From Tubulanus polymorphus (lineage: Eukaryota > Animalia > Nemertea), in assembly GCF_964204645.1 (NCBI RefSeq), contig NC_134030.1:2215355-2279354 (forward strand): a stretch of DNA of 64,000 bases, written 5' to 3'. Under the pieces are notes generated by a model. That model saw only the letters and a list, made by a program, of their open reading frames with translations, had not been told where the DNA came from and did no database searches. The position numbers were made by a program, and so were the translations under genes. Every line of letters begins with the position of its first letter. The stretch's first letter is position 1. This document shows positions 16,901 through 60,569 of the stretch, piece by piece.

Positions 16901-17438
16901 TATCTGATCAATATTTACGTCAATATTCATTAAAACGAGATTCCAATGCGTAACATCGCAAACAGATTTGAAAATGCAAAAATAATCGCAAAAAAATGCG
17001 GAAAAACTTACAATAAACGACGTAATCTTTGACTAATGAATCGATCTGATTCGTAATCCCGGCGCTCACCGCTGAACATTTCATTTTAGCTCCGTTATCT
17101 TCGACTTTAGCCGACTCGTCGTGAATGAGTTCGCCGTTCGCGACATCGCGCAATAAATCCCAAACTACCGAACCGCGACGCTGTTTAAACAACGACAGAC
17201 GCGGCGCCGGGTTACCGCCGATCGCGACGCAACGCCACCTAGCGGTCGAACCTACCGACACACCGGTGCCCGGTGGAGTCAATTCAATTCGATCGGGCGG
17301 ATCTGAAATATTGGAATAATAGTAAAAATTTAAGTTTGTAGGATGGCTTTATATAAGTCAAGAAGATACACAATTAATGAGGAATAAGGAATATACGAGA
17401 AAAATCAAACAATAATTCAGCCAAAAAATGAAAAGTTC

Positions 17439-17526
<88 letters not shown>

Positions 17527-22349: not shown

Positions 22350-25092
22350 ATGGCGCCAGTATCATTTAAAACGATTCCATTGTTTTATCTAGTTGTTGTA
22401 AACATTATTCAAACGAGTGAGTATTCTATTAACTGTAGGAGTTTTTACTGTGAACGTATTTTGTTTACAAACAAATCAATATATTTCAATTCACGAATTG
22501 AATGAATGATTCGCGCGGCCGCCGGTTAAAAAACAACCTACGACAGACGGACCGGCCCTCCTCTCGCCGGTTGCTGAATATATACTGCCTATGTCGTAGC
22601 TGGTTTGGTTTGTTAACAGTAAACATATAGAGTGACAGTGTATGAGTCTTCATATATTCAGTTTTCTGTATTGTCACATAGAGACATAGAGTAGACAGAG
22701 TGTGGGGTGGTAGACGGTCCTCCTTATTACTGAGATTACGTATTTTACCGAGATGACATGAAATATAACATATTTATTCATAACTCATCTCGGTAAATTA
22801 CGTCATCTCGTTAATAAGGAGGACCCGTGGTAGAGCCCGTTCATTTACACTTGAAGCAAAGCAGAGTCTGTTCAATTGATTAGTAATAAATGATACTTAT
22901 ATGCATATTTGTTTGGGATGCTGTTATGGAAAGACAGAGACAGAGACAGAGATGTCATGATTGCAATTACAAATATAGGCCTAAAAATTGTATTGGAATA
23001 GTATCAAAAATATAGGCGCGGGCCTACACATCAATACATCATCCATGATCTAGGCAGCTTTAAAGACTATTAATAAGAATTAGCTGTTCAAGTTGTCGGA
23101 ATCCAGTTGACGAGACAACTGGCTTTAGTGTCATAATTGTTGGACTGTTTCTCCTTTTTTCCAGGTTATGGATTATCGACGAAAGCCAAAGTATTCCCGA
23201 AACAGGTTCAACTATTCCGCGATGAATCTGTAAACGTTAGTTGTCGACTGACGGATTTTCCTCCGAATACGCACCCGGTCTGGCGTATCGACAGTCAAAC
23301 CCAACCGATAAACTTCAACCACGATTGTATGGCGTACCCGATGAGTTCGTTCGGTTCGTTTCCGATCGAATCGTTATCGGTTACGTGTAGTCCGGGCGCT
23401 GATTTAAATGCCGGTGGCTCCCTCATGTGGTTGAATATGACGGTTAAAACTAAAGGACAGTGGTACAGTAATGGCCGACCGATGTTCTACTGCGCGTTAC
23501 TCGCTAATCCTGAAGGTGTTGATGTCACATTACTCGGTATGTGGTTCGTTTTTTAAACAATTAATTTACCAATATCCTAAGCTTACTTGAAGTCCCGGTC
23601 CTGGGGCAAGTTTGGTATTAACTTTAACCCGGGGTTAACTCAATTGAAAATGAATTTGGTTAGTTCAAAATAATACCAGCTTGAAAACCTGACCCAGAGC
23701 CCAGTTTCATAAAAAGGTTTAACTCTTAAATCGATTTAATTTCTTCATTCAGTTTATCCTAGGCTTTAATCATTTTTGTGAAACTGGGCCCAGGACCCAA
23801 TTCCATAGAGCTCCTTCAAAGTCCCTCTGAAATAATGGACCTATATGCTAAAGCTACTTGGAGTTGAGTCTTCTGTATTTTGCTCATTTGTGTAAGTGTT
23901 GCTCATTTGTGTAAATGTTGCTCATTTGTGTAAAAGTGTGTAAGTAATTTGAAGAAGGCAACATAATTCAGAAGAGTAGACTGAGACAGCTGCTGCTGCT
24001 GCAGCTGTCTGATTGTGCTCTTATTCTTTATACAAACTCAGCTGAATATCTTGATATTTGAAAGAATATAACTGAGCTGTTTCCAATTCATGAATGCGAA
24101 GAGAGCAAATCTTTTTCTCTTTAGTTGAACCAAAATTTGTAGCTTATTCAACCAATTTTGGTTACTACACATGATTGCGGAAACCCTTCACTCCGTTATA
24201 TTATATTATCCCTGCATTCAAGTTATCACCTGTTTTGGTAGAAGGGCCCTATAGTTCCACATTCATAAGGCTTTCTACAATTCCGATTGTTAACGATGAT
24301 TTTCTGATGATTTTGAGTTGTGTTTCAGATCGAGTAACGACTGGTCAACTCGTCTCTAAACCGATGGTCAGAAGCGATCAGACTCTAAAACCTGAGGTTC
24401 AAATTAAATTCACTTGCGACACGGGAACTAATAATAACGAATGTCAATATACGAGACCTACGATTCAATGGATAGTCGGGGTACGTTTAATTTCATCATT
24501 TTAGAAACGTATTTGGGTATGCACTGCACATTATCATTATCACTTGTCCACTGGGCTAGTGCAGTTTTATGTCTCCAAGTTTTCCCAATCGATACAACAA
24601 ATGGACTGCTTGTGTAGGGCAAGTAGATTTTTGAGGGAGCAAGTAAAATTTCAGGGCCGGTGGCTCTTATTCCTTAGATCAGACCCTGTGTTTGGGTATG
24701 CACTGCACAGTAGACTGTGCGTTTGCATCAAATCTCACAGGGTTTATGCAAATTCCAGAGCACTCGGAGAGACATGAATTGGGAGTAGGATCATTTTAAA
24801 CATTCTGTCACTTGAGGCATGCAATAATGAGCTCGGGCTACACTGTAGTTGCATTATCCTCAATACGTGGACTTGATTCAATTTCTAATTGGTTTACAGC
24901 AAAAAGAAATCACGGAAGGCGTAGTGAATAATCCTGTAGATTGCGGAGGAAATCCGCCGAAATACCGAACATCCAGCGATATAAACATCAGCGGTGACCA
25001 GTTCAACGGAGTTCAGGACGTAAAGTGCGTCGTTAAAATGAAGGATAGAATCGATGAATCGGCGACTAAAACTATTACAGTCAAATTTCCAG
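22350..25092 (+). CDS. 5' module of an Ig-domain surface protein: signal peptide + V-like Ig + second Ig; continues to a downstream exon
   Basis: Exons 22350-22416 (MAPVSFKTIPLFYLVVVNIIQT, gtgagt donor), 23165-23536 (VSC..PVW..MFYC), and 24329-24480 + 24900-25092 (FTC..IQW..VKC). Ends KFP-G|gtaaga in phase 1 with no stop. Confidence 0.82.
22715..22826. mobile_element. 112-bp MITE with ~40-bp TIRs and an 8-bp target-site duplication
   Basis: ggtcctccttatta...taataaggaggacc flanked by GTGGTAGA at 22707-22714 and 22827-22834. Confidence 0.82.
23695..23793. mobile_element. Short MITE of the abundant CCAGTT..AACTGG family
   Basis: Inverted termini gcccagtttca ... tgaaactgggc. Confidence 0.6.
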
Positions 25093-43856: not shown

Positions 43857-46310
43857 AGGGCTCTATTCACTAACAATACGCTAAATGTATAGGAAACTAG
43901 TGTGTTGAAGGTTGAACCAAAAATATTCTAAACTAATGCAAAAACTGCTGCAATGTCGCTTCATAATTACAGAGGTCATTCATGAGTAATTTCTGGAAAT
44001 TGATGTTTAGTGTTTATAGTTTATAGTGTGAGGTAGTAATATATAGTGACTTGTAGTCGGTTCACTTCAGTTAGAGAGAGACTTCAGCAGCAGAGTCACA
44101 TAGAAACAATAACTATCACCTCATAAAACACCCTGTATATATAGCAGTTTGAACCCAGTCGCGATACAACAACAAGCGCATGCTCCCATCTCTGGTGCCC
44201 TTTTCAAAAACAATAGCAATTTTTCTTGAGTGCCTGGAAGTTGCATTGAAATGCACTGACATTTCCAAGATTTTCCAGAACCCAATTTTGGCTTCTGCAT
44301 AGACACTTGTACCATTTTCATTACTTTTTTTGCTCCCATCGAAGTCTGCCCCTTGAATTCACCCCTGAAGCCTAGTACACACACACTCCAGTTAGAATAA
44401 AGTCAAATAAATGTTTTTTTTATATAATTGATATTAGTGGGAGAAATGCTTTTAGAAATCAAGTAAAGACTCGACTGATATCCATATAGTTCAATACAAT
44501 AAAACATTCAATGTCAAGATGTGTTCATTCACATATCAGAAAATGTTACCGGTATTTGAACGAATGCATTTGTTATTTTAAATAAAATCAGTCTTTATGA
44601 CATAGATTCATTACTAACTATTCAAGCCAAAATTTGTCTACTGATAAATCAAATTCTACAAGAAATAAACCTGAACATATTTCCTATATTTTATATCTCC
44701 TCTTACCATCATTGACATTCATCCATTGTCACTTTCCTATTTCTCAATAGTTTCTACTTGAAATGTCTGGCAATTTCGTATCCGATAAACTTCCATCTCG
44801 TCAGTGTATACATATGACATATGTAATGTCAAATATTGGTTCATATATGAAAATACTTGAGACCAGAGAAATCTACGTAACATTGAGTTGATTATTTGAC
44901 TAAACCATGGACTCTTAAGACTCTTAGAGTCCATGACTAAACTACGGGTGAAACATGTCAATAAATACAGTGGAAGTTGCCTTGAGTCTTTGTATAAGGG
45001 ATGATCATCATTTTGATGACTTACCCAAATGACTTACACTTAGTAGATTGACTGTTATCCAAAAGACTTAGTAAGTTGAGTTAGAAATACAATTGGAGAC
45101 TCAAAAATAGAAACGACTTTAGTAATGTGATGATTTACCCTAATGATGTCTTCTTACGCTTAGTAAATTGAATTAGAAATACAAATTAGGACTCAAAAAC
45201 GGCGATGACTTCGGTGAGCTTGACTGTATGAATGCTATGCCGAATGTAGGAATAACTGTATAATTTTAGGATACATTCCTGAATGATAATTAAACCGTTC
45301 CGTAATTAGAGATAGATATGAATGAGTGTCCTTTACATTCAGGTCAGAGATCACATGCGTTTTACTAGACTATACTATATATACCTCTATTGACATACAG
45401 TAAAATCTAGTAAATCATCTGAGTTTGAAACTGGAACACATCATAAAAATCTGAAATTGTTGTTTGGATATAAAGGCTAAAAATTGTGCGATGTTTTTGT
45501 TAAAATCGTCACGATTTTGATGTTATCTGTAAAGTTTTAGCGTAAAATCTCACATTAGGAGTGAAAAATAGAGTCCGGAATGTTTTAGTGAGCTAGAAGT
45601 TTATTCTACCAGCTAGGAAACATTTCAGACTCTTATTTTTCATTCTGATTGTGGTACTCTAGTTTACACCGCAGACTCCACGGTGTTTCCTTTCATTGCG
45701 ATACATTCATATTTCTGAGGAGAATGATTCATCTGAGGATTGGTTTTGAGACGATGAATGCGGTTTTTACCATCATCATCATCGTTTATGAATTGAAAAA
45801 TTCCGATATATTTTTACTCATCTCTCAGTCCTCACACTGTACACAACCCACACCTACACAACTATCACCTATCTCTACACTGTAAACTGATGTTTCATAG
45901 TAACATTGATTGTTAGGAGGGAATTTTTAAGTAAGGCATTTGTTTTTGAAGTGCTCTTGAAATTGAACACATGGTTAGTTTAATTATCGGATCGTATCTC
46001 TCGAGCACAGGTGGCTCATATCACATACCGTTTTCACATGTGGATATGGCCCCTCGTTTAATTGTGTAGATAGTAGCGGAACTTTCTGAATAGGGCGGGT
46101 AATGATTATAGTTGTAGTTTATAACTGAAGGTGGCGGCACCTCATAGATCGCTAGTCGTCCGTGTAGTGATGACTTCTTTTTCTTTTGTTTTATCTTGTT
46201 TTACGTTCGGAACTTGTTTCCCGAGACGAACCTGATCGGATTGTTCGTATGACCTCACATCCTGACCACGGCTGCTGAAATGTTGTCCACTGACACAGTG
46301 TAAGCAGCAG

Positions 46311-46408
46311 CAGGACTCGAACCCGCTTGTCCCTGAGCACTGATAGTGAATGCTACAGCTGGACTAGAACCCGCTTGTCCCTGAGCACTGATAGTGAATG
46401 CTACAGCA
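46311..46408. repeat. 48-bp tandem duplication
   Basis: Two copies of ggact(c/a)gaacccgcttgtccctgagcactgatagtgaatgctacagc. Confidence 0.8.
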
Positions 46409-47400
46409 TCACTCCTCACACCACTGTCTGAGTTACTGAGGCAGCTTTCTGAAAAATTTGTCTGATTTCTGAAAACTCTTTGATGCCTTCTGGCAATTTC
46501 ATCCTCTTCATAGAAAATTTGTTTGCAGTTGCAAACCTTTGTGACTTGATATGATTTTATTTTTGTAAATAAAAGTTTTAAGAAATGGATGAATACCTCT
46601 TGTGGGACAGACGTGTTTGAGGTGGTTAACTATCTAGATGTTTGTAATCAGTAATCCCGAATGTTGGCAGAAAATCGAAGGGTTGATATTGAATCGAAGG
46701 TCGATTTTATAGAATTATTTTGCCTAAATTTTTGCATGTTGCTTTTATATGATATATCAGATGCTTTTAAAATGCTAATCGGTTTCTTATTTTATTTTTC
46801 CATCTACAGAAGCAAAGACTGGTGCAGGTATAGTCCGCTTTTTATAATTATCTAAATGTTGTGTCTCGTTAAAACCGAGGATTGAGTTCCACAGTTTCCT
46901 GGTTAAAGTTGAATCTATCAAAGTTAAAATCAGTTGATTTCCAATGTTTTTTTAACTCTATAGATTCAAATAAAACTGTAGAACTTGCTCCAGAATAATA
47001 TTCTAGATTTTACTAATATCCATTCTCATTTTCCTATTTTCAAACTCGATGTATGATAAATTGATTATTTTTCCCCACTTTTGTTAAGTTGGCTGGCAGC
47101 AATCTCTTTATTTTCAGTATTTCAATCCAATGCTTTCCCTTCATGTATAACCTCCACCTGAAACTCAGTTTCACAGTCTGTGGCTAGTTCGACTCTAATT
47201 ACAAAGATTAATTTATTTTTTAATGTTCGAGTCAAATTCTAACTCACAAAACTGTTGAACTGAGTCGACATGTTTTAATGTTTGTTTTATTTACACATTT
47301 TTATATTTATTTATATCAATGAATGTGTATATAGTATATACGACTTGTGACTTCAAAATTTTGATTTCTGTTTTGTTAAAAATGTATTGTTTGTCCATGT

Positions 47401-47660
47401 ATTCCACAGTTCAGAATCCAGTTCCACAGTTCTGGATCCAGTTCCACAGTTCTGGATCCAGTTCCGCAGTTCTGGATCCAGTTCCACAGTTCTGGATCCA
47501 GTTCCACAGTTCTGGATCCAGTTCCACAGTTCTGGATCCAGTTCCACAATTCTGGATCCAGTTCTGCTGTTCTAAGTAGAGATTTGACTTTTGAGTTAAA
47601 ATATTGAAAATGAACTAATCTCAACAAGAGTCAAACCAACAGCTCTGGAACTGGATCCGG
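47401..47660. mobile_element. MITE whose left terminus is amplified into a 20-bp minisatellite
   Basis: gttccacagttctggatcca ~8 times, then the MITE body ending ctggaactggatcc. Confidence 0.8.
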
Positions 47661-49190
47661 AAACATGAATTATTTGCAAGCAAGTGGATACAGCGAACAG
47701 TTTCAAACAAAAATCTATATTTGAATATTTGAAAATGTTTTCCGCTGTTTAATTTGTGTTTATCACGAAATATTGAAATCCGTTTCAAACATTTTTTTCG
47801 GTTTCGTTTTTAAAGAAAACAACAAAAACGACACGAATAGTAAAACTGTACATGAGAAACCACAAACTGGCGCCAGTACTAATAAAGGTAACGCGTGAAA
47901 GATTCATTAGAGACAAATTGAAATTGAAGGTGGTTTGTTGTGTTGCAGTTACCTCTTTTGCTTCTTTCCTTGATGAAGTCTATAACTACGGTTTTAGTTA
48001 TAGACGATTCAAGTGTTTTAGCCGGCTGTCAATCATTTCTTTAAATCCCGCCACCTTTTTTATTTAAAACTGAAACCTTAAAACTATTTCAAATAACTGA
48101 TGATGTAGAATCCCACGATAAGATAGAAAAACGAGTTTGAAATGTTTCCTGATCGGCTAAAAATGGTTGATTCAACGTTTCAATTTCATCCTCATAGCAA
48201 TTAGAGTGGTCTCTTAGGATACAAGATCCTCTATTTAAACAGTATCCCGCCGCGTCATATTTGGTTTGCCAGTTTGTCAGTTTGCCTTTGATTTATGTTT
48301 TTAATCAAGAAAACGCCGGAAAGAATTAGATCAAACATTTTCCAATGGTGAAATCTATGAAAATTAGTTCCCTCGCGATACTGCAGAAATCAAGCCGTGA
48401 ATAGCCTTGAAGGAATACCTTGTTTTCCTTTCTTTTTGTGGAACCTTCTATATCATCATAACAACATGGACTCAGAGAATTGGTTAACCCAGGCCAGGGT
48501 TACCCCGGTCCTGGGTTACCCTGGTCCTGGGGCTGGATTATCCCACCCCTGGTTTGGTATTTTAATGATTGACAGTATTTTTACGCAGTTAGTAGTTTAA
48601 CACATTGATAAACTCCTCGGTTTTCGAGCCGGTGTCTGATTCGACGTAGTTCAAACGAATCATTCAGATATTTTTTTCAGGTTTTGGGTTTAGTTTTTTT
48701 TTCAGTTATAAACCGTTGTTGTTTTAAGTGTTGTACGTTTACTGTTTTATTAGTCAGTAGTTAGATAGTGTTTACAGTATTCATGTGTTTTCATATTCAA
48801 TTAATCCCTGGTTCATTCAAGTTTCATGTAAACCAGCGATACAACCACGTAATCTTTCAATCCTTTCGTTTCATTTTCGATGCGGGATTACGACTTTTGT
48901 CGAATACTTTTCTTTTATTGCTTTAGTAGAGAAAATATATCGGTATTATTGGTGGGCTTGTGTAATCAAATTCAGGTCGTTAAAGTTTATTATCACGAGG
49001 CTAGATTCGATGATTTGTATAGAATAATAGCGTATAGGTGAATAGGTCAAGTCTAGAGTCCTTCTCATTGCTATAACTGGTTCCGAAACTAGTTGATTGA
49101 ACCATGGACTCTTGAACGCAGCGCGTCGTCTATTGCATACAGGCAGTAGGAAGAAGCAGCTGTTGTGTGTGTGGTGTGTGTATATCCAAT

Positions 49191-50916
49191 ATGTCGATGA
49201 TGGGATTCACACGGTTTTCATTCCGCTCGTCCGCGATGCTTCTAAATTCTCTACTCGTAGCCGCCGTGTTCGCGACCGTTCTCGCTCAGGATGATGGTAT
49301 GAATTTTATACGGCGTCGATTTCGTGTTAATTAAGGGACGAATTAGATTTGAATTTCTAGACGGATTTATAGGATTTATATATCTGTGCGAGTGTGATGA
49401 TCACATGGGACTAAAGTAGTAGTTAGTCTACGGATTATGCAGTCCACCATGTATATGTGTAGCCTATGCTTGAATGTAGATTTTGTTAGCGATATTCAGT
49501 TATTCCGGATGGAGTGGACGGAGTCGTTAGTGTATGGAATGATGAATCAAATCGTTGGACGATAAAGACTGCTTCACACGTGTGTGCGTGTTTAAATTGT
49601 GTGAAATAATGAGGGCATGTGGGAGGGAGAGGAGGGAGGGAGGGGGGAGGGAGGGGGAGGAGATCATTAACCGTATCACTAAAACCAAAAATACATTAAG
49701 ATAGACGTAAATCCTCTTTATGTATTTTTGCTAAAACCTAACATCATTTCATAGAATGAATTTTCATTCTAAGTCTGAGATGAAATATGTTTTTTGGACG
49801 ATGGTCGAGAGTTTAGTTTCAATAGTCTTTTTCCATATTTCATATTAGATCTAGTTATCAAAATCTCGTTAGAACAATAGATTTATATCACGTCAATCAT
49901 GGGTCATCGTTTCAGTTGGGTTTATATTCTCTTTGAGGCACACATTGCACACTGTAACATGCTGATGTATATATATATGTATTGAATTTGGCTGATGGGA
50001 TTTAGAGTTTGATTGAATGAATTTGGTTGTGGGTCGCACACAAATTACTGATCGTCCGGTTCTGGCGGTGTATTGGAACAGCTCTAATCTAATTACATTG
50101 ATTTATATATCGAATTCTAATCAAAGAGGTTACGATAACCTCTCTCAGTGACCTCTTCACGAGGCTGTTGGAGGTCGGTCGTAATTGCCTCGCCGGTGCT
50201 AATTGCTTCCATAATCAAAAACCTAATTGACAAAAGGTACCAAGAGATTTTCAGATACGATACCATAAAACTCATTTAAAAGTAATCAAAATATACTTAA
50301 GTCGTTAAGTGTTAATAATGACTTAATTGATGAAGTCGTTTAAGTCATCTCTATTTTTGAGTCCCAATTTGCAATTCAATTAGATAAGCATAAGTCGTAA
50401 TTTGGATAAGTTGCCAATATATCGACCATCCCCTACTCTTACTAGGATGACTTGGATGAGTTTGGCTGTAAGGATTAATAATTTCGCTCCTATTTTCTGA
50501 ATTCGTTAACATCGAAAAACTCTTGGTAGCTCCGTAGAATTGACTGACTCGGTTGCAAAGTTTACGTGAACGTCCGGAATATTTTTGAAAAGAAAATTCA
50601 TGATAATTTATGTAAATTTATGAAAATATATGTAAATTTCGCAACCAGTCTTTAGACGAATCAATCCTAACCTCATTGGACACTAACCCCGGCTTTTTTC
50701 TGCCTCTTGTTATTTGTAGGTACCGGTGGAAGTTCTTCACCTCACAACCAGGCGGCGCCACTAACGAGCCCCGAGATCGCCGGTATCGCGATCGGTGCCG
50801 CGGCCGCCGTCGCGCTCTTACTCATCGGGTTAGTCATCTTCTTACGTAACAAACGCGTTCAAAACGAAAATAACGGACAAAAGGAGGCGCTGGCCGAAAA
50901 AGCGCAGGACGTGTGA
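49191..50916 (+). CDS. Two-exon 100-aa single-pass membrane micro-protein (signal peptide, ~22-aa ectodomain, TM, short tail)
   Basis: Exon 49191-49296 MSMMGFTRFSFRSSAMLLNSLLVAAVFATVLAQDD-G|gtatga (phase 1). Exon 50720-50916 follows tttgtag and encodes GTGGSSSPHNQAAPLTSPE-IAGIAIGAAAAVALLLIGLVIFL-RNKR...AQDV*. Total 303 nt in frame. Confidence 0.78.
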
Positions 50917-51699
50917 AAGAAGAACATCGACGCGAAAACAAAAATCCCGACCAACTTTTTACAAACGATTAAAAAAAAACACCTTGCGTTAATTTACACG
51001 TTTTAAAACACGTAGAATATTCGTGATGATCTGAGAAAAAATCTTGATACCGAAATGTGGAATTTCGTCGCTGTAAATCGCGACGGCGTTAATTTAGAAA
51101 TGTTCTCATCGCTCGGACGATGAATACTGCGAGATCGATATTTTACGAGATTGTTTTATCTCTGTTTTCATTCCATTTTTTAAAAATGAAGACGACAAGA
51201 AACTCTCGGATGGTAACGAACGACGGAGACTTATTTTAAAACGCGCGAAGAAGGATTCGGTCGTCTCTAGCGTTCAGTCAGATATGTACTCTTATTAATC
51301 AGTGGTCGTCTGTTAAAGGGGGTTTAAATGCGACGAGGCCCGCGATCAGTGATCATCGAACCCCCCGTTTTAAGTTTTGATTTTGTATACAACGCAAATA
51401 TGTAAATAAATCTTTCTTGAGAAATTTTACACAAAGATTGATCGAGTATCTTCGTCATCAAATGTTTATTCTTACGTTTTCGATCAGCATTTTGGTTTAG
51501 AGGAGAATTCTCTACTGATCCGCCTTCAGTCTCTATCTCTCTCGTTAGACGCACCTCTGATTAATATATCTAATTAATAATTAACGTTATCTAATTAATC
51601 TTGATTGTTTAATTATCAAGCTTTTGCAAGTGGAGAAACAGTGTTAGTCTGTCCCGGGATGATAGAGGTTTTAAGTTAGAGAAGACTACACTCAAGTCA

Positions 51700-51897
51700 G
51701 AAACAACAGTTTAACTCAGAGATAACTGTTTAACTCAGAGATAACTGTTTAACCCAGAGATAACTGTTTAACTCAGAGATAACTGTTTGACTCAGAGATA
51801 ACTGTTTAACTCAGAGATAACTGTTTAACTCAGAGATAACTGTTAAACTCAGAAACAACAGTATAACTTAGAAAAAACAGTTTAATTGAGAGATAAC
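51700..51897. repeat. 19-bp minisatellite
   Basis: taactcagagataactgtt, ~10 copies. Confidence 0.9.
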
Positions 51898-53989
51898 TCG
51901 GAAGATAATCTGAATAATCATCACAAGTTTTCACGGTGAAAAGAGATCCAACTTGGGCAGAATCTACTTAACTGCTTAGCTCAGATATCGCTTGCAAGTT
52001 AAGACAAATTTTGTCCTAAAAGACCTCACCCGGGATTTACTAACACTGCTTTAAGACACAGGCCAGGTTACGCACTTAACAAGGTAAACCTCATGAATCA
52101 ATGATTAATCTTTGCTTTCATTCTTAATTCATAATTCTTTAATCGAATCTAATTCCCCCTTGCATTCGAAAAAAATAAGAATTGATTCAAGTTCTCTGTG
52201 GAAAGGAGTCGTGGAAAAGTATCCGTTTTTAAGCGAATGATAAGGATTTGAAGAGGTTTATCTCATTGGCTGCTGATCTGAGGAATGTTCACACTATTTA
52301 ACACCAGATTTCAAACAGTAGTAAACTCTACTTTACTCGGTGGTATAGTATTAGTAATGTATTTTCTCATACACCACAACATCTAGAATATAATCTTTGC
52401 ACTCTATATAAAATGAGGCATGTTTATTATTATATAGATGGAATAATGAGGTTTCTGAATGTACAATTACAAGTTATTACCAATGGGATATAGTCGGTGT
52501 ACCGAGAGTTAGGAGGAGTTCTTACTTGGTAAAAGTCGCTGAATTTTACTCAAAATCTTTTCCCTTTAAAGCAATTGATGCTAACGCCACCGAGTGACGT
52601 ACAGTTTACTGTCTACTGCAAGTTCTATGATATTCTCTTGATCTTCATGCTCTGCTTTAGAGATGATTGTAATCGACACATTCACTGACAGTAGCAACTG
52701 TCATTAAACTCAGAATTATTAGGAAGAAATGAATTTCGTTCATTGATTGAAATTAATATATATATATATATATATATTTTAGGCGTTGATGTTTTAGTGT
52801 TTTAGTATCGAGACCGGATTTCAATGGCTGCATTTGAAGAATCTGAGAATTTTATTCGAAGTTATTGAGTCTCAGTAAATCTCATGAATCTAGTGAATCA
52901 GTCATCTGGATCTGGTTCCACAGTTGTGAGTTAATTTCAGTTAGAATTAGTCTGTTTTCAATAAGTTGAATGTTTACCCACAACCGTCGAACTGGTTGCA
53001 GAATCGTACGGTCTCAGTGTCTTGTAGTTTTCAATGTTTTGTCGGTTTAGATTTTGGGATTTTGCAATTATTTTACCGCCTATTATTTGTTCATTTAAAA
53101 ATGCATTTTCTATTTTAACGAAAAAATATGAAAGTTTCTTTAACGCGATGTAAATACGTTATCTTTAAAAGAAAACTAGAAAATTCTAGAATTGCTTTAT
53201 CAATTTTTCAAATGAAAAAACTTGATTAATATTTCTATAAGATTGATAATAAAAGATTTGATTTTCAGTTAACTCGTAATATTTGAATATTTGAAATTAA
53301 CTGTCGTCATATTCAACGCAAAAACAATCGCAAACAGATCCAAAATATGCGGTCACAAGACTTCGTACTTAGCGTTAGAATGGGGTACGGTGATGCCGCC
53401 TATCCCACCAGATGGCGTAACGAGACTCGGTCTTATGTTGTCAACGTTAGTTCATTATCGAAATCAACTTTGAACGCATCAGCGTTGAAATTCCCCCATT
53501 CAATTCCAAAGTCGTCTCTAGCATAGGATAGAATAATTTCATCAATTTGGCTACTGTATTTAGAAATCTGTGGTTCCCGGTTTTTGTAGACAGGGTTTTT
53601 ATGGGGTTCCAATCAAAATTGGGATAATGTTATTAGCGTAGAAATATTACCCCCAGTCTTTAGTCTTATTATTAAAATGAAGAATCAGTTTTTTTCTGAT
53701 GAGAGTACTTGGTTAGCTCAATGTAGTTTGTAAGTTTCGTTTGCTCAGCTCAGTTGAAGTCATCCACGCGGCGAACCATGACATGGTCTGTATGTGTATT
53801 TTGCGTAGGTTTTCACTATGGAATCTGTGAGGAATTATCGACCATCCAAGCCGGACTTGTAGCCAGGTTTCAGGGCCAAAAAAGCACATATTTACGGCAA
53901 TTTTCATGGGTAAAAAATTGAAAGACTTGTGATTAGGTATCGGAAAAAGATTTATGCTTTCAATTCTTTACCCATGAAACTTGCTTCAT

Positions 53990-54165
53990 AACCCTAACCC
54001 TAATGTCAGTCCCTCCCGGGATTTGATCCTGGGTCTCTCTCTTTGGAAGCCAGTGTGCTAACCACTAGACCATTGAGCTCTAGTGAAATAAGTTGTTAGT
54101 AAGTTTGTCTGGTCAGTGTTGATGACCATTAATCCATGGTGACCAGTCAGGTGTGTCGACTGATT
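53990..54165 (-). mobile_element. tRNA-bearing dispersed repeat, copy 3
   Basis: aaccctaaccctaa next to reverse-strand tggtctagtggttagcacactggcttccaaag...ggatcaaatcccgg. Confidence 0.6.
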
Positions 54166-55360
54166 GTCCTACTCACTAACATGCTTCAACTACGAGACTT
54201 TCCAATGAGGCTCATTACCAAATAAATCCATTATTCAATGGATCTTTTTAATGAGGTAGAACAATTTTAAAATGTTTTAGCTGATCAGAAACAAGGTTAT
54301 TAGGGGTTTTAGGGTGATGTTAAAATGACGGAATCCTGCATGGCTACAACCAACAAAGTTCCATTTATTTAAGAAATGTATAAATTATTTATTTTTTGTG
54401 CGTGTAGCAGCATTCCTAGTTCGATTGTGTGTGATAATTTTGAAATGAACCCTCAGTATTATTAAAAGCTCGCTTGCCGCAGTCTGCAATATCTATTTCA
54501 CTTGCTTGGCTCGTGTTAGCGCGTTCTCACGAGAATTCAAAAAATTATTTTACATGATTCATCTGGTTTAGGCTGTCATGATTTCTAGGAATATCATTAT
54601 AAGAACATTAGGGTAGAGATTATAATAGACAAATAGCAGTCGTAAAGCTGAAAGTAGAAACAGAAATTCACAGAATCATTAGAAGAATAACAACATTTAT
54701 GCTTCTAAGGTTGCGGGCAATAGACTTCATCTGGATTGATGGAAGTTTTCTACCCAAACCCTAAATATGTTGTTTTACTTCTAGTGATTGTGGGTTTTGC
54801 TTCTGACAGCATTAAGGTAATTTAGAAATACGAATTTTTAACATTTCTAATAAAAGCCTTTTTCCTAAAACGCTTGTCAACACTAAGAATGAAAAAATCT
54901 TTTTATCAGATTCGATTACCATGACTACTGTATGACGCGGGTTGTCATGGTAATGACTGTTTTTGTAAATACACGTATAGCCCTCTATATTCTGATGTCT
55001 GTAAATTGTTCGAAAAAAGATATTAACTTAAAAAATAAGAAATCGCTTTAAAAAAAAAAATATTTGTGGCTTGAGAAATGATGAAAGAAATGAATGGGAA
55101 TAAATTTTATATAAAATTTGTGCAGATATTAATTTATAAACGCTTTGAATTTTAGTGAATGTATAGTTGTAATAGTTCGGTGCTGATTGATGTAAATCGA
55201 TGTAGTCCCATGCTGATATGTATCCAATACATCATTAAACATGTATTTTAGTTGTTGTGATGTAAATATAATGTCATACCCCTCCGCGCTCGCAGCATTA
55301 GCATGTGTTAGGGTCATGATCTCCGTGTTGATATTTTATGTGATGGAGTTGCACAACAAA

Positions 55361-55404
55361 ACAGAGCAATGATCAAAACATAACAGTTTTGATCATTGCT
55401 CTGT
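55361..55404. repeat. Perfect 19-bp inverted repeat (hairpin)
   Basis: acagagcaatgatcaaaac-ataaca-gttttgatcattgctctgt. Confidence 0.85.
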
Positions 55405-57118
55405 ATCACTTGTTGGTCACCTGTTGGTTAACTAAGCAACTGAAGCGTTAGGGCTGCAATTGCTGATTTGGTTAGAGTCAACCATTGGATAGCAGACACA
55501 GTGAGAATTGAAAGTTTGTTATCACTTATATCCACTGGTTAACTCCAACCAGCTTTTGAGTAACTGGCTCCAGATTTGTAAATCACATCAAATACTTGAG
55601 CACCTAAGAATCGATGTCAGTTTCATTCATATATAAGCTTTCCTCTCTGTCTTGAATTGTGCCATATAAATGTGGAAGAACTAATAAACAAGTTTGTATG
55701 CAATATTAATGTATTATATTGATGTATTTTATTTACCAGATACCTAGTAAACCATTTGGGTTCAGAAAAAAGCACATTGATTCACAAGATTTTGTCATAA
55801 AAGAAGAAAATAACTGATTGATAAGTTATATTTTGCCATCTTTTAGGGTTTCTCAAAATTCCAAAAGCTCGATTAGACTTAAGCAAACAGTGGTATTATT
55901 ATTGTTAATTTGTGAATGCGAGTTAGATTTTAATAATACAATACCGCTGTTTAATCCTATAGTATATATGTATTGAAGTTATCATGAGATACACAACGAA
56001 CCCACAGATGTACACAGCTTGGGCTTAGCGCATATCCCGAATGAAATGTATTTAATATTACATCGTGTATTTATTTATGTTAAAATTATGCGAAGAGCAG
56101 CCCTAGAAATTAAAGCATTATAGCATTTTTGTTTGAAGACATGTTCATAGCTGCACAATATTAGACTATTGATGTATCTTGTCGTTAATGAATATTCACA
56201 TTTCAACTCAAGTCAACAAACATCCATTTCTAGCCATAATACATTTGTAAATACGTAAGAGTTAAAAACCCATCATTTCTCTCCCTCTCTCTCTATCAGT
56301 ATCTATTACTTCTAACGAGTCAAAATTCTGATCTTCCATCTTATTATTTAGAGTATGAATAATCTGAAAAATTCCAGTAAACCAGGATCAAAGTTTTTGA
56401 AGTTGTGACACAAATATGACTCTGTTATCAACTTCTGGACTCGGTTCAGAAATCAATAATCTAAAGCTCAGATATGTTTTGGAAACACAGATCACCTTTT
56501 AGTTAGACTGCATTAGTTGAAATTGATAAATTTTCCAATATTTCAATTCTGGAGTGAAATAATGACCAACAGCTGTGTGGATCTGATCGAGTATATTCAG
56601 TGAACTGCAGAGAATTCTATTCTGAATAAATGATGATCAGAATTTTAAAAGCTTTAGATTTGCAGCTCATTATTAATATTTACTTGCACTCTCTTATCAT
56701 TTTCATTCTGTGAAGCAAGCATGTCTGCCCCTCATATCTGCCCCTCATATCTACCCCTCATTCTGTCATCGTTTGTTTTACGTTAAATTTACCTGTCATT
56801 ATTGTGAACAAAATATTAAAGTAATTTTAAGTAAAATAAAGATAAAAAATCTGATGTAATCGATTACTTTTATTTCGTCGATTTTCTCGACTGTGCATGA
56901 TGAATATATTAGGTAGAAGTGAATGCATTCTCTACTCTGGACTACTCTGGACCATAGCAGAGGATCACTGATGTTGCTGAGAACAGAACAAACAGAAGAT
57001 ATGGAGCTACAGAGATGTCATCGACCAGAGGAATCTTGAGCAACAGACAGAATTCAAAATCAATCCCTCATATCTTATAAATTGCTAACAAGATTTTATT
57101 TTTTCAATTTATTTCTAG

Positions 57119-57244
57119 TTGACGGTTTGAGTAATATGAAGTTGATCGCGATTATTATTGGAACGGCTGCCGGTGTTGCTATAGTGACTTCGATTATTGT
57201 CGCCATCGTTTTACATTTGAGAAAACAAAAACTATCTTCTACAA
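57119..57244 (+). CDS. Transmembrane exon, symmetric phase 1-1 (VDGLSNMKLIAIIIGTAAGVAIVTSIIVAIVLHLRKQKLSST)
   Basis: Pyrimidine-rich acceptor ...tttatttctag; ~24-residue hydrophobic helix followed by RKQK; donor A|gtaggt in phase with the serpin exon. Confidence 0.78.
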
Positions 57245-57319
57245 GTAGGTATTTTATATTTGTGCGGGTCCTGTACAGTTGGAGTCCTTTATGATGCTAC
57301 CGTTTGGATCGATAACAAA

Positions 57320-57452
57320 CAGGGGCCGGTTGCTCAAAAGTTGGTTAGAGTTAACCAGTGGAGAGTTGATATGGTGACAATTGAAATTTCATTGTTACTA
57401 TGGTATTTAAAGGCCGGTTATTTTTAACCGATTTTTTAGCAACTGGCCCCTG
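57320..57452. mobile_element. MITE in the intron between the TM and serpin exons
   Basis: Inverted termini caggggccggttgct ... agcaactggcccctg. Confidence 0.75.
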
Positions 57453-57962
57453 GATGTTATAACAAATTTGGCATTATGTAAGAATGGTAATTTCATTGAA
57501 TTTGTATTGAGTAAGATTGGGAAAAAGTGTTCTCTGAAAAGTGTTAGCGTTGAGTGAGAAGTGGCATTGAAAAGGATGTCTTTATGACGGACTTCGATGA
57601 CAGTTCATTGTAAAAGTGCCCTGGACTTAATCTTCCCAATAACAGAAGTAATAGTGATAAGATGCTAGTATTAGGATGCCTTTTGTTTCCCAGCCGAGAG
57701 GCTAAAGGTTCAGAAACCTACAGGGTAGGAGGTCCTGGCACAGAGATTGAGATGAAGATGATTGTATATTATATAGTTTATAGCTTCGTAACCATTTCCA
57801 AAATTGTCAGTTAAAACTAACTCTAAATCTATAGAAATAAACCTAGAACTGTGGAATTGGAGTGTTGAAGAGTATTAAATTCTTGAGAGCTGGGGCTATC
57901 TTTATTTTGATATGTTGCACTGTTTTAGAATTGATTTTGACTCTCCCTCTCTCTTTCCACAG

Positions 57963-59281
57963 ATGACTTGTGCATGTCGCAGAAAGGCAAAAAGATGCGT
58001 AAAGCTTACGTTTCCGAAATGGAAACTCCGCAAGAGCAGACGGCATCGGTGGAAGAAGCGTATTTCCACGACATCGTCTCCGCGACAACTTTATTCGCTG
58101 AACGATTATATTCTCGAATAGCGATGATAAACACGGATTCGATGATTCTATTTTCGCCGTTTGCTGTCATGAACATGATGTCGGCGATATCGACCGGAGC
58201 TCGCAACGCGACCGCCGACGAGCTGGAGAAAACCATCCGAATAAACGCCGTCAAAAATCTCGATTTGAAATTCGAATCGTTGAATCGTCTGATCAACCGA
58301 AATCCGAACAATCGTAACTACACGTATAAACTAGCACAGGGAATGTTCGTCGCCGCGACGACCGAATTAACGCCGGCGTTTAAATCGTCCGCTCAACGGA
58401 ATTATCGTATATACGTGCGTTCGGTCGATTACCGAGACGGCAACCGACACGACGTACGACACGAGGTGAACGAATGGTGTCGTAACGCGGCCGGTATCGA
58501 TAACGTCGTCGATGTGGATGATATCCACGCGGATGTATCGATGTTATTGATCACGGCGATGTACGTGCACGCGACGTTTCGTAAAACGGACGTCGATCGC
58601 GTCAGTACGATGCCGTTCTCGTTCCCGGACTCGGACGTGCCGACAGACGTCCACGCCACTCATCTCCTCGGTTCGTTTCTCGTCGGATTCGATCACGGTT
58701 TAAACTGTCAGGTGCTCGATATACCGTTAGATAACAGTCCGTTAACTCTGTGTATATTATTACCGGATAAATCTGAGAGTTTAAATGACGTTGAGCGTAG
58801 AATAATAAACGGAGAGATCTCCGATAAACTGAGCTCGGTCACTAATAATCTATCTTATCGTCAGTCCAGTATTTATATCCCCGATATCCACTTATCGTAC
58901 GCGATTGATTTAGAAACGTACCTGTCTGGTTTAGGACTGGTCGGTGCGCTGACCGACGAGGCCGATTTATCCGCGATGACCACCGTCGTAGATATGGGCG
59001 ACGACGAAGAGACCGGTAACCAAAGCAACCGTAACGATAATAATAATCTACGATTGTCTCATTATATTCATTCGTTGCATTTCGACGTTTGCGACAAGAA
59101 TACGAAACCTCAAGAGGAGCGTTTCGACGAGGACGACGTGGAATACGTGCTCGTTTATCGCGTAGATCGCCCGTTTATGTTCGTAGTTCGACATCCGATT
59201 ACCAAGGAGATCGTAATAATGGGACGATCTGGTGAACTCATTTCTAAAGATCGTATCGCTTACCATCAAACCACATTATAG
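57963..59281 (+). CDS. Serpin domain encoded by one terminal exon; divergent, probably non-inhibitory
   Basis: Serpin motifs ILFSPFAV, GARNATADEL, LLITAMY, CQVLDIP, LCILLPD, ADLSAM and VDRPFMFVVRH...IMGR. Preceded by the strong acceptor ctccctctctctttccacag, phase 1. Stop TAG ends at 59281. Confidence 0.92.
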
Positions 59282-60399
59282 GACGGTTCATTGGAATCGA
59301 TGGATTTATTTCCATAAACTTGGGCCTATTACTCAAAAGTTGGTTGATTTTCTGGGGTGGGTTTCGTAGATTTTGAAGAAAAATGTGAACACATTTTCAA
59401 TAATTGAACTCGGAGTTAAATCTTAAGTCGGAAATGTGGAAGTGGACCCAGATTGAGGATTTACCCCTAGGGATAACTCGGTCTATGAAACCGGGCCCTG
59501 GATAGATGAATCACCATAATAATCATTTGGGTAATGATCCGTCTGCAACATAGACTTAAACGGCCAATTTCACTGTATTCTGCTATGTTCACCGGTCTGT
59601 GGTCAGTCACTCAAAGGTTGGTGAGAGTTAACAGATGGATAGTTGAATGATGTTTTAATTTTCACAATGTCAACTATCTGCTGATTAACTCTAATCAAAT
59701 TTTGAGCAACTGCCGCTCCTAGTGTTTGAGCAAGTATTTAACAACTGTGTATCCTCAAATTCTGGGTTCACAGTTGTCCGCAAAGTTAGTTTAACTTTTG
59801 ATCTTGGATCATTTCATTTTCTCGGTTCATCAATTTGGTTTGTTCTAAATCGATTGAGGAGTTCTTGTTGATAACTGGGCCTTGTTGATGATTTTCACCA
59901 CATGGCCCACTCATTGATTAGATTGTATGTATTAGAAAACCATGCATCGGGCTATCAACGTTAGAATACAGCCAGTCGTGCATTAAGTAAAAATAAAATT
60001 CGGGTTTTGACTTATTTGTTAAATGATTGCTTGAAGAAACTTTAATTTGTCTCAAATGTCTTACATTTATTGTAAGGTAGTAATATATATGACATGTATA
60101 AACCATGTATAAGAGTATGTTATAGTATTTCTAAATGATTTAATTGACAATGACAATGTGTGCTGTACATAGAATCTTGGAAATTCACATTCCATTCATA
60201 ATTTACTAATTAATTTTTCGAAGATGTTTACTTATTCTAATTTAATTAAATTAATATATATATTTAATTGTACACGTTTTGGTCTAATAGAATATGATTA
60301 TTTATGATTTGTAATAAAATAACTATATTTCAAAAAATCGAAACGTATTTTAGTAATGTTTTTTTTCTTATCAGGGATCGGTATAAACAGAAATGTTTT

Positions 60400-60569
60400 C
60401 TTATTCGCGCCGAGTCCGTTTTATGCCAATAAATTGAGATTCAATTGAATTGAATAGCCGAATCCTTGTTTTACCCAAAAGCCGCGGCCTGATTTTAGAC
60501 TTGTAAAGGATTCCCCTGCTTAATGACGTAAATGGGAAATACCCGATATTGACAATTTTGACGTAAAAA
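60400..60569 (+). promoter_or_regulatory. UBE2Z proximal promoter/5'UTR
   Basis: Directly upstream of the ATG; two TGACGTAA CRE/ATF-like sites (~60524, ~60559) and AAAATGGC spanning the start codon. Confidence 0.45.

What the first reader, a model, noticed from the sequence alone, without database searches (positions are those of the whole stretch)
57119..59281. Membrane-anchored serpin: a TM exon spliced in frame to a serpin predicted to face the cytoplasm
Seen: the serpin ORF has no signal peptide of its own and begins after a strong phase-1 acceptor (57963). About 720 bp upstream lies a TM exon whose donor (ACA A|gtaggt) joins it in frame, giving ...IVAIVLHL-RKQKLSST-NDLCMSQKGKKMRK...serpin. 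Known: basic residues C-terminal to a TM helix place that side in the cytosol (positive-inside rule), and animal serpins are normally soluble. Inference: the serpin fold is the intracellular domain of a single-pass membrane protein. I do not recognise this architecture from any described family.
Basis: partly seen in the sequence, partly recalled or inferred. Interest (0 to 1): 0.9.

Follow-up and report, generated by a model that had tools for sequence, protein, structure and literature searches.

The report
Membrane receptor with a cytoplasmic serpin tail
A ribbon-worm gene splices a signal peptide, two Ig-like domains and one membrane-spanning helix onto a complete serpin fold that has lost its inhibitor hinge, so the serpin should hang inside the cell from a surface receptor, an arrangement I could not find described anywhere.

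Summary
The ORF at 57968-59281 is a full serpin (Pfam PF00079, E 2e-54; AlphaFold2 pLDDT 88.9; best fold match human SERPINB1). The predicted 57244/57963 splice is seen directly. One contig of an RNA-like public run joins exactly these two positions across a 718-nt GT..AG intron, and intron depth there is 5-100 times lower than exon depth.

NCBI's automatic models for Tubulanus polymorphus (XP_074653712.1 and XP_074653713.1) contain the same junction. They add a signal-peptide exon, three exons for two weakly Ig-like domains, and an 18-nt micro-exon. Seven GT-AG exons reproduce the 748-aa protein exactly. Signal peptide plus a single TM helix followed by a basic cluster predicts a type I protein with the serpin in the cytosol.

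The serpin resembles intracellular clade-B serpins. Its hinge (D-K-N-T-K-P-Q-E-E against consensus E-E-G-T-E-A-A-A-A) and 30 of 65 conserved columns are changed, so it is probably non-inhibitory. Polymorphisms suggest purifying selection (pN/pS about 0.19).

No orthologue and no comparable architecture turned up in 1.8 billion representative proteins or in the literature searched. Still open: single-molecule linkage of the Ig exons to the TM exon, a possible alternative serpin-less TM exon at 50720-50916, an abundant unexplained RNA upstream, and all protein-level evidence. The scan had already noted the whole-gene model on this window (s1-518614).

The parts
22350..22416 (+). Exon 1: start codon and signal peptide (aa 1-22 of isoform X1), ends in phase 1
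   Evidence: Exact match to P0005; joined exons translate to P0005 exactly; GT donor
23165..23536 (+). Exon 2: first Ig-like domain (aa 23-146), phase 1-1; isoform X2 starts at an internal Met here
   Evidence: tblastn 100%; sub-threshold Pfam Ig_3 E 0.03-0.05; Cys49...Trp...Tyr-x-Cys132 pattern
24329..24480 (+). Exon 3: first half of second Ig-like domain (aa 147-197)
24900..25092 (+). Exon 4: second half of second Ig-like domain (aa 198-261), ends in phase 1
   Evidence: sub-threshold Pfam C1-set E 0.0016
46810..46827 (+). 18-nt micro-exon (EAKTGA), phase 1-1, ends ...GCAG
   Evidence: Only match in the window to the back-translated pattern, 0 expected by chance; polypyrimidine-AG acceptor and GT donor; needed to reproduce P0005
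57119..57244 (+). TM exon: stalk, 26-residue hydrophobic helix, RKQK stop-transfer cluster; phase 1-1; contains an in-frame ATG at 57136
   Evidence: spliced contig in X2
57245..57962 (+). 718-nt GT..AG intron removed in run X2; holds a high-copy repeat at about 57317-57410
   Evidence: (joint table, depth table)
57963..59281 (+). Terminal coding exon: about 40-aa flexible linker plus complete serpin domain and stop codon; internal ATG at 57974
   Evidence: Pfam E 2e-54; AF2 pLDDT 88.9; Foldseek SERPINB1 TM 0.86-0.88; 12 synonymous versus 8 non-synonymous polymorphisms
59093..59143 (+). Hinge and reactive-centre-loop region (residues 374-390 of the 435-aa exon product): D-K-N-T-K-P-Q-E-E then an acidic F-D-E-D-D-V-E stretch
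   Evidence: Alignment to 90 serpins and to MENT
50720..50916 (+). Candidate alternative terminal exon (unverified): phase-1 acceptor, stalk, second TM helix, 23-aa tail and stop. It would give a serpin-less Ig-Ig-TM isoform
   Evidence: ORF and sequence; CpG-rich like the gene's exons; no read or annotation evidence (blank)

Best explanation
This is one gene of the nemertean Tubulanus polymorphus, about 37 kb long with seven coding exons. Its mRNA encodes a type I single-pass membrane protein made of a signal peptide, two weakly Ig-like extracellular domains, a short stalk, one TM helix, a basic flexible linker of about 40 aa and a complete serpin fold in the cytosol. The serpin exon looks like a formerly independent, intronless, signal-peptide-less (clade-B-like) serpin gene. 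It appears to have been captured as a 3' terminal exon through an acceptor 11 nt upstream of its old start codon. It has since evolved fast and lost the hinge needed for the serpin suicide-inhibitor mechanism. It most likely works as a membrane-tethered binding or scaffold module, or as a tethered protease substrate or decoy via its acidic loop, rather than as an inhibitor. Shown: the serpin fold, the exon structure and the TM-to-serpin splice. Inferred: linkage to the Ig exons in the same molecule, the topology, the capture origin, the non-inhibitory status and any function.
For: The exact splice 57244/57963 appears in an RNA-like run with a depleted intron. NCBI models P0001 and P0005 carry the junction, and seven GT-AG exons translate exactly to P0005. 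The model includes an 18-nt micro-exon with good splice signals, which I take to need read support rather than ab initio prediction. The spliced X2 contig begins at 57117, two bases before the exon. That is exactly where a k-mer graph would branch if a spliced form ending ...GCAG meets the unspliced ...tctag. No other protein-coding gene is evident in the 32 kb between the Ig exons and the TM exon. Exon 4 ends in phase 1 without a stop, so the ectodomain needs a downstream partner. All exons share an unusual CpG excess (observed/expected 1.6-2.1, against 0.47 in the intron). The four other serpins of this genome are single-exon, lack signal peptides and have canonical hinges. The hinge is changed at P17, P15, P13, P12 (Pro), P11, P10 and P8, the breach Trp is Phe, and 30 of 65 conserved columns deviate. 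The terminal branch is 4.8 against a median of 1.2. pN/pS is about 0.19, binomial p 3e-4.
Against: No single read or contig links the Ig exons or the micro-exon to the TM exon, so the link rests on the NCBI model and on an indirect graph argument. X2 is not recorded as RNA. X2 also holds an unspliced contig running from at least 54552 through the acceptor to 57146, at 2-4 times the depth of the serpin exon. Another transcript therefore overlaps or abuts the TM exon, and an internal start at ATG 57136 is possible. A second intact TM-plus-stop exon at 50720-50916 could be the usual 3' end of the Ig gene. One X3 contig carries a 1-nt deletion at 58044 that would remove the serpin from the frame. 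No orthologue exists in the databases searched, so there is no cross-species conservation of the architecture. The Ig assignment is sub-threshold and the ectodomain model failed. There is no protein-level evidence at all.
Confidence: 0.68

Rival explanations
1. The TM exon and serpin exon form a transcription unit of their own, started from an internal promoter upstream of 57119 and translated from the ATG at 57136. The product is a short N-terminally signal-anchored protein, like a cytochrome P450 anchor, with the serpin in the cytosol and no ectodomain. On this reading the NCBI Ig-TM-serpin models are read-through (conjoined) transcripts.
For: X2 contig 55837-57146 runs unspliced across the acceptor and overlaps the spliced contig by 30 nt. 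The ATG at 57136 is the first in-frame ATG after a stop, has A at -3 and directly precedes the helix. An intact alternative TM-plus-stop exon at 50720-50916 could be the true end of the Ig gene. AATAAA near 56843 could end that upstream transcript.
Against: The spliced contig starts at 57117, as expected for a second, spliced entry into the exon. The micro-exon in the NCBI model implies read support for the long-range splice. Phase-1 symmetry runs through exon 4, the micro-exon, the TM exon and the serpin exon. A very long 5' leader would carry upstream ATGs.
Confidence: 0.17
2. The spliced RNA is a by-product. The functional product, if any, is an ordinary soluble intracellular serpin translated from the ATG at 57974, or the serpin is a decaying relic dragged into a neighbour's transcript.
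For: The ATG lies 11 nt after the acceptor, and all paralogues are stand-alone intronless serpins. X3 and X4 contigs run unspliced across 57963. There is a very long branch, a degenerate hinge and a possible frameshift allele at 58044.
Against: In X2 the last 500 nt of the intron have depth 0.75-13 against 46-104 in the exon. That leaves little room for a promoter just upstream, and the exon is reached by splicing. X3 and X4 may simply be DNA. The 437-codon frame is intact in an AT-rich genome, pN/pS is about 0.19 and the fold model is confident, all of which argue against decay.
Confidence: 0.1
3. The hydrophobic segment acts as a signal peptide or type II anchor, so the serpin faces the lumen or outside, as in ordinary secreted or surface serpins.
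For: Most animal serpins with an N-terminal hydrophobic segment are secreted. Several spiralian serpins among the hits have a signal peptide plus a C-terminal hydrophobic anchor and should face outward. The serpin part has four N-x-S/T sequons.
Against: The segment is 26 residues long and lacks a small-x-small cleavage site. It is followed by eight Arg/Lys in 25 residues and preceded by only two. In isoform X1 it lies 270 residues behind a separate signal peptide, which forces it to act as a stop-transfer. The serpin has an odd number of Cys, and its nearest relatives are cytosolic.
Confidence: 0.05

Closest known systems
Clade-B (ov-serpin) intracellular serpins: SERPINB1/leukocyte elastase inhibitor, MENT, maspin, PAI-2, ovalbumin
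   Same: These are the best sequence and fold matches (4ga7 E 7e-30, TM 0.86-0.88; MENT; maspin). Like them it has no signal peptide of its own and sits in the cytosol. Like maspin and ovalbumin, its hinge is incompatible with loop insertion.
   Different: Those proteins are soluble single-domain proteins. This one is the C-terminal domain of a signal-peptide/Ig/TM protein. Identity is only 22-25%, and it sits on a branch four times the median length.
Fish C1 inhibitor (SERPING1) with two N-terminal Ig-like domains
   Same: Domain order is Ig-Ig-serpin. The protein-atlas feature search returned these clusters as nearest architectures, and they are described in PMC4476131.
   Different: Fish C1 inhibitor is secreted with no TM helix, so Ig domains and serpin are on the same (outside) side. 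It is an active inhibitor of a different clade (G, multi-intron gene). The resemblance is convergent, not homologous.
Predicted spiralian serpins with signal peptide and C-terminal hydrophobic (GPI or TM-like) tail, e.g. Owenia fusiformis CAH1782229.1
   Same: They are serpins predicted to be membrane-attached in lophotrochozoans.
   Different: The anchor is at the C-terminus behind a signal peptide, so the serpin faces outward. Their hinges are canonical inhibitory ones. No extra domains are present.
Bacterial zf-HC2 anti-sigma-like protein with TM helix and C-terminal serpin (hit P0133)
   Same: It is a single-pass membrane protein with a serpin C-terminal to the helix.
   Different: It is prokaryotic. 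By the usual anti-sigma layout (my own knowledge) the zinc finger is cytoplasmic and the serpin extracytoplasmic, which is the opposite side. It is unrelated in origin.

Membership tests
Serpin superfamily (PF00079) | Sequence match to the family profile above the curated threshold over nearly its full length | tested here: met
   185.5 bits against cut-off 27, profile positions 2-366 of 370
Serpin superfamily (PF00079) | Complete native serpin fold | tested here: met
   AF2 with a 91-sequence alignment: pLDDT 88.9, pTM 0.88. Foldseek target-normalised TM 0.84-0.89 to native serpin structures
Serpin superfamily (PF00079) | Conserved C-terminal s4B/s5B motif (F-x-A-D-H/R-P-F-L/M-F) | tested here: met
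   Y-R-V-D-R-P-F-M-F aligned to the consensus
Inhibitory serpins | Hinge consensus P17 Glu, P15 Gly, P14 Thr/Ser, P12-P9 small residues (Ala/Gly/Ser) that allow loop insertion into sheet A | tested here: not met
   P17 Asp, P15 Asn, P13 Lys, P12 Pro, P11 Gln, P10 Glu, P9 Glu, P8 Arg. These columns are 84-100% conserved in 90 aligned serpins and canonical in the four paralogues
Inhibitory serpins | Covalent SDS-stable complex with a target protease and a stressed-to-relaxed transition | not testable with these tools
   Needs biochemistry
Clade-B / ov-serpin type intracellular serpins | No cleavable N-terminal signal peptide on the serpin itself; nearest relatives intracellular | tested here: met
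   The exon product begins with a polar, basic linker. The top solved matches are SERPINB1, MENT, maspin, PAI-2, ovalbumin and SERPINB9
Clade-B / ov-serpin type intracellular serpins | Phylogenetic grouping with clade B | tested here: inconclusive
   In the quick ML tree of 39 serpins the query sits on a 4.8-long branch at an unresolved position
Type I single-pass membrane protein | N-terminal cleavable signal peptide | tested here: inconclusive
   Isoform X1 begins with a basic n-region, a 13-residue hydrophobic core and a small-residue c-region, on its own phase-1 exon. No dedicated predictor was available. Isoform X2 lacks it
Type I single-pass membrane protein | One hydrophobic helix of about 20 or more residues with more basic residues on the C-terminal flank | tested here: met
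   Hydropathy 2.54, the only such segment apart from the signal peptide. Helix in the AF2 model at pLDDT 77-84. RKQK and KGKKMRK follow it
Type I single-pass membrane protein | Experimentally determined orientation | not testable with these tools
   Needs tagged expression, glycosylation mapping or protease protection
Immunoglobulin superfamily ectodomain | Ig-domain profile match above threshold or an Ig fold | tested here: inconclusive
   Only sub-threshold hits: C1-set E 0.0016 (19.2 bits against 21) and Ig_3 E 0.03. Cys...Trp...Tyr/Val-x-Cys spacing and phase-1 domain exons fit. Single-sequence AF2 was poor, pLDDT 41, all-beta

The most novel reading that the evidence does not exclude
A surface receptor whose intracellular effector domain is a serpin fold. 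Ligand binding by the Ig ectodomain would control, or be read out by, a membrane-tethered serpin module. That module would bind or be cleaved by cytosolic proteases through its acidic loop (F-D-E-D-D-V-E, caspase or granzyme-like taste). An alternative serpin-less tail exon at 50720-50916 would give a switchable pair of isoforms. This would be a new class of receptor tail and a new use of the serpin fold.
Probability: 0.2. Interest if true: 0.8.

Novelty: new variant of a known kind. Interest (0 to 1): 0.6.

Why it matters
Serpins are among the best-studied protein folds. They are known as soluble proteins (secreted, cytosolic or nuclear), a few of which associate peripherally with membranes. 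A serpin fold genetically fused behind a transmembrane helix as the cytoplasmic domain of an Ig-type receptor would be a new context for the fold. It would also be a clean natural example of exon capture: an intronless gene turned into a terminal exon, followed by rapid divergence and loss of the inhibitory hinge. It gives an experimentally tractable question, namely what a tethered non-inhibitory serpin does under the membrane. Its weight is limited because it is so far a single-species gene model without orthologues, and it is supported only at transcript level.

Tried and rejected
- **Exact look-up of P0001 on public contigs:** nothing on record.
- **Word-based homologue searches:** the stretch spanning Ig end, micro-exon, TM and serpin start (P0005:225-400) and the ectodomain (P0005:1-267) both came back blank. 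So I found no independent transcript-derived fragments, no annotated short isoform and no ectodomain orthologues.
- **Exhaustive phmmer of the serpin:** no relative closer than 22-29% identity. Hits with internal hydrophobic segments turned out to be merged tandem serpins whose second signal peptide sits mid-protein, so they are not analogues.
- **Literature searches** for transmembrane, membrane-anchored or membrane-bound serpins and related term sets: nothing relevant.
- **Rfam on 46000-60500:** no family, so the abundant upstream RNA is not a known structured RNA.
- **Upstream region 54800-57100:** single-copy apart from one small repeat, and it holds no ORF of 70 aa or more.
- **Single-sequence AF2 of residues 1-330:** too poor to use.
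- **The two TM exons compared:** BLASTP found nothing. A Smith-Waterman score of 52 beat all but 1 of 2000 segment-wise shuffles. That is too weak to claim duplication, and there is no DNA similarity.
- **Neither TM exon has a paralogue in the genome**.
- **The ectodomain paralogue on contig C10 (L010):** I scanned about 20 kb downstream for a TM exon without a clear result.
- **ML tree:** did not place the serpin because of long-branch problems.
- **Horizontally acquired or viral serpin:** rejected, because all exons of the gene share the same CpG-rich composition.
- **Retrocopy explanation for the joint:** rejected, because the genome holds one copy only and the DNA-like run lacks the joint.
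Full report
**What is at the coordinates.**
- The window comes from the nemertean Tubulanus polymorphus. That name is on the only near-identical database protein.
- The ORF at 57968-59281 on the plus strand matches the Pfam serpin profile at E 2.2e-54 over positions 2-366 of 370.
- About 720 nt upstream lies an exon-like stretch, 57119-57244. It encodes a 26-residue hydrophobic segment followed by RKQK.
- That stretch is bounded by a ...tttctag acceptor and an ACA A|gtaggt donor.
- The serpin exon starts behind ...ctctttccacag at 57963.

**Is the junction used?** I found runs holding the stretch and laid four of them on 54800-59700.
- Run X1 has flat depth (37-40), including the intron, and no relevant joint. 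It behaves like genomic DNA.
- Run X2 behaves like RNA. Depth is 46-104 over the serpin exon but 13.5, 3.8 and 0.75 in the three bins of the intron.
- One X2 contig (record 11, 454 nt, depth 64) lies on 57117-57244 and continues at 57963-58288. The tool lists this as 'skips 718, GT..AG'.
- No joint from the alternative donor at 57248 was listed.
- X2 is not on record as RNA, so 'RNA' is my inference from the depth profile.
- X3 and X4 are patchy and include contigs that run unspliced across 57963. They may be DNA.

**The whole gene.**
- The near-identical database proteins are two NCBI automatic models. P0001 is XP_074653713.1, 'leukocyte elastase inhibitor-like isoform X2', 671 aa. P0005 is XP_074653712.1, isoform X1, 748 aa.
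- tblastn mapping, a pattern search for six unmapped residues and a script check give seven coding exons: 22350-22416, 23165-23536, 24329-24480, 24900-25092, 46810-46827, 57119-57244 and 57963-59281.
- All seven have GT-AG borders, and their joined translation equals P0005 exactly. I did that join only inside a script, to test equality with the stored database protein. All searches used stored proteins or single exons by reference.
- Exon 1 encodes a typical signal peptide.
- Exon 2 and exons 3+4 encode two modules of about 120 aa with Cys...Trp...x-Cys spacing. They carry three N-glycosylation sequons and eight Cys.
- The Pfam Ig matches for these modules are only sub-threshold: C1-set E 0.0016 and Ig_3 E 0.03.
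- The 18-nt micro-exon has a strong acceptor and a GT donor.
- From exon 4 onward every junction is phase 1.

**How firmly are the Ig exons linked to the TM exon?** There is no direct proof. Three indirect points favour the link.
- An 18-nt exon is unlikely to be in an automatic model without spliced-read support. This is my inference.
- The spliced X2 contig begins at 57117, two bases before the exon. The micro-exon ends ...GCAG and the intron ends ...tctag. A k-mer graph would merge the spliced and unspliced paths precisely from that AG onward. A polymorphism at 57147 could produce the same break, but none was listed.
- No other protein-coding gene is evident in the 32 kb between exon 4 and the TM exon, and exon 4 ends in phase 1 without a stop.

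Three observations count against a simple picture.
- X2 holds contigs covering at least 54552-57146 without interruption at depth 206-239. That is 2-4 times the serpin exon, and they run through the acceptor.
- That region is single-copy, CpG-poor, has no ORF and matches no Rfam family. An AATAAA lies near 56843.
- At 50720-50916 there is an intact phase-1 exon-like ORF with a strong acceptor and the gene's CpG-rich composition. It encodes a stalk, a second TM helix, a 23-aa tail and a stop.

This exon could be an alternative, or the ancestral, 3' end giving a serpin-less Ig-Ig-TM protein, with the abundant RNA as its long 3' UTR. I did not build or search that joined hypothetical isoform. No read or annotation evidence for it was obtained (one search was blank).

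**Topology.**
- With the X1 signal peptide, the single TM helix must act as a stop-transfer. The helix has hydropathy 2.54 and is a helix in the AF2 model at pLDDT 77-84.
- The C-terminal flank carries eight Arg/Lys in 25 residues, against two in the N-terminal flank.
- This is the textbook type I layout (positive-inside rule, established knowledge) and puts the serpin in the cytosol.
- If translation started at the in-frame ATG at 57136, the same long helix plus basic cluster would be an N-out/C-in signal anchor. The serpin would again be cytosolic.
- The serpin's ancestry fits. Its nearest solved relatives are SERPINB1, MENT, maspin, PAI-2, ovalbumin and SERPINB9 (fold search).
- The four other serpins in this genome are single-exon, start directly with the serpin core without a signal peptide, and have canonical hinges.
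- A lumenal or extracellular serpin is therefore the least likely reading. No experiment supports either side.

**State of the serpin domain.**
- AlphaFold2 with a 91-sequence alignment gives a confident complete native serpin (pLDDT 88.9, pTM 0.88).
- The first 25 residues after the splice are low-confidence. Together with the juxtamembrane stretch they form a tether of about 40 aa.
- Against 90 aligned serpins the domain deviates at 30 of 65 columns that are at least 80% conserved.
- The hinge is the clearest case: P17 Glu to Asp, P15 Gly to Asn, P13 Glu to Lys, P12 Ala to Pro, P11 Ala to Gln, P10 Ala to Glu, P8 Thr to Arg. P9 is Glu.
- The breach Trp is Phe. The loop is five residues shorter than in MENT.
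- Small residues at P12-P9 are required for loop insertion in inhibitory serpins (established knowledge). I therefore predict that the domain is non-inhibitory, like maspin or ovalbumin.
- The loop is strikingly acidic (F-D-E-D-D-V-E). This may be a relic of, or a bait for, Asp/Glu-specific proteases. That is speculation.
- In a quick ML tree the domain sits on a branch of 4.8 changes per site against a median of 1.2, and its position is unresolved.

**Is it decaying?**
- Twenty differences between the reference and contigs of the other runs fall in the serpin exon: 12 synonymous and 8 non-synonymous. The exon has 294 synonymous and 1020 non-synonymous sites. That gives pN/pS of about 0.19, one-sided binomial p 3e-4.
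- Together with an intact 437-codon frame in a 35% GC context and a confident fold model, this argues for a constrained coding sequence.
- One X3 contig carries a 1-nt deletion at 58044. It would shift the frame to a stop at 58119-58121 and leave a serpin-less TM protein. I could not check whether this is a real allele.

**Origin (inferred).**
- The acceptor lies 11 nt upstream of an ATG (57974) that would start a stand-alone, signal-peptide-less serpin.
- All paralogues are intronless.
- The likely history is capture of a downstream intronless serpin gene as a new terminal exon of an Ig-TM gene, followed by fast divergence.
- Similarity between the two TM exons is marginal: score 52 against 30 +/- 5 in segment shuffles, nothing by BLASTP and nothing at DNA level.
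- Copies of a high-copy repeat flank the serpin exon. I draw no conclusion from that.

**Comparison with what is known.**
- The exhaustive search of 1.84 billion representatives found 8754 serpins, but none closer than 22-29% identity apart from the gene's own model.
- Among the 150 best hits, internal hydrophobic segments belong to merged tandem serpins.
- Six hits, one named Owenia fusiformis, have a signal peptide plus a C-terminal hydrophobic tail and should face outward.
- One bacterial protein combines a zf-HC2 anti-sigma motif, a TM helix and a serpin.
- The atlas feature search pointed to Ig-plus-serpin clusters named C1 inhibitor. Fish C1 inhibitor is documented as secreted with two N-terminal Ig-like domains (PMC4476131) and has no TM helix.
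- Full-text searches for transmembrane, membrane-anchored or membrane-bound serpins found nothing pertinent.
- Within these limits, a serpin as the cytoplasmic domain of a single-pass receptor is undescribed. The limits are that only the 150 best hits were visible, the literature library is open-access only, and there was no InterPro architecture query.
- The sequence itself is already in NCBI as an unreviewed automatic model.
- The scan had already noted the whole-gene model on this same window (s1-518614, 742 aa, without the micro-exon). My reconstruction agrees and adds the micro-exon (748 aa).

**Verdict.**
- It is a member of the serpin superfamily by sequence and fold. It fails the inhibitory-hinge test. 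I file it as a new architectural variant.
- Interest is moderate to high. It is unusual and testable, but it is a single-species gene model and it lacks full-length transcript evidence, protein evidence and any known function.

Noticed in passing
window 50720-50916 (+): Intact phase-1 exon-like ORF inside the long intron. It has a strong acceptor, CpG-rich sequence, a stalk, a second TM helix, a 23-aa tail and a stop. It would give a serpin-less Ig-Ig-TM isoform. It is not in the protein database and no reads were laid on it.
   Followed up: partly
window about 54552-57146: RNA-like run X2 covers this CpG-poor, ORF-free, single-copy stretch continuously at depth 206-239, which is 2-4 times the serpin exon, and runs through the TM-exon acceptor. 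AATAAA lies near 56843. It could be a long 3' UTR of the alternative isoform, a non-coding RNA or a 5' leader. The strand is unknown.
   Followed up: partly
window 58043-58049: Three different states appear in runs said to be from one sample. X2 has 58043 G>T. X3 has a 1-nt deletion at 58044 plus 58049 G>A. X4 equals the reference. The deletion would shift the frame to a stop at 58119-58121 and remove the serpin.
   Followed up: partly
window 57317-57410, 59316-59480, 59594-59710: Copies of a very high-copy short repeat (depth up to 37,000 in the DNA-like run) flank the serpin exon in direct and inverted orientation. They cause spurious joints such as 57357/59447 in X1.
   Followed up: partly
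window 55450-55585: A short palindromic repeat of about 110-130 nt has dozens of copies on both strands across the genome at 72-79% identity. It looks like a MITE-like element.
   Followed up: no
window 11900-21000 (-): A series of minus-strand ORFs with Ig-like and FN3-like patterns (e.g. 15204-15551, 15881-16255, 16920-17282, 20541-20897, 11951-12313). They look like a large IgSF gene lying head-to-head with the serpin-tailed gene.
   Followed up: no
L002 and L003 (G000:C4:19747109-19754689), L004, L005: The four other serpins of this genome are single-exon, lack signal peptides and have canonical inhibitory hinges. L002 and L003 are a recent tandem pair.
   Followed up: partly
L010 (G000:C10:630354-630752): This is the only paralogue of the ectodomain (32% identity). 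Here Ig1 and the start of Ig2 lie in one exon. No serpin is on that contig, and no clear TM exon was found within about 20 kb downstream.
   Followed up: partly
hits P0011, P0027, P0043, P0047, P0111, P0115: These serpins have a signal peptide and a C-terminal hydrophobic tail (GPI or TM-like). One is from the annelid Owenia fusiformis. They look like a possible group of outward-facing, membrane-attached spiralian serpins.
   Followed up: partly
all coding exons of the gene (e.g. window 57963-59281): CpG observed/expected is 1.6-2.1 in the exons, against 0.47 in the intron and 0.97 for the window. CpG density alone marks exons in this genome.
   Followed up: partly
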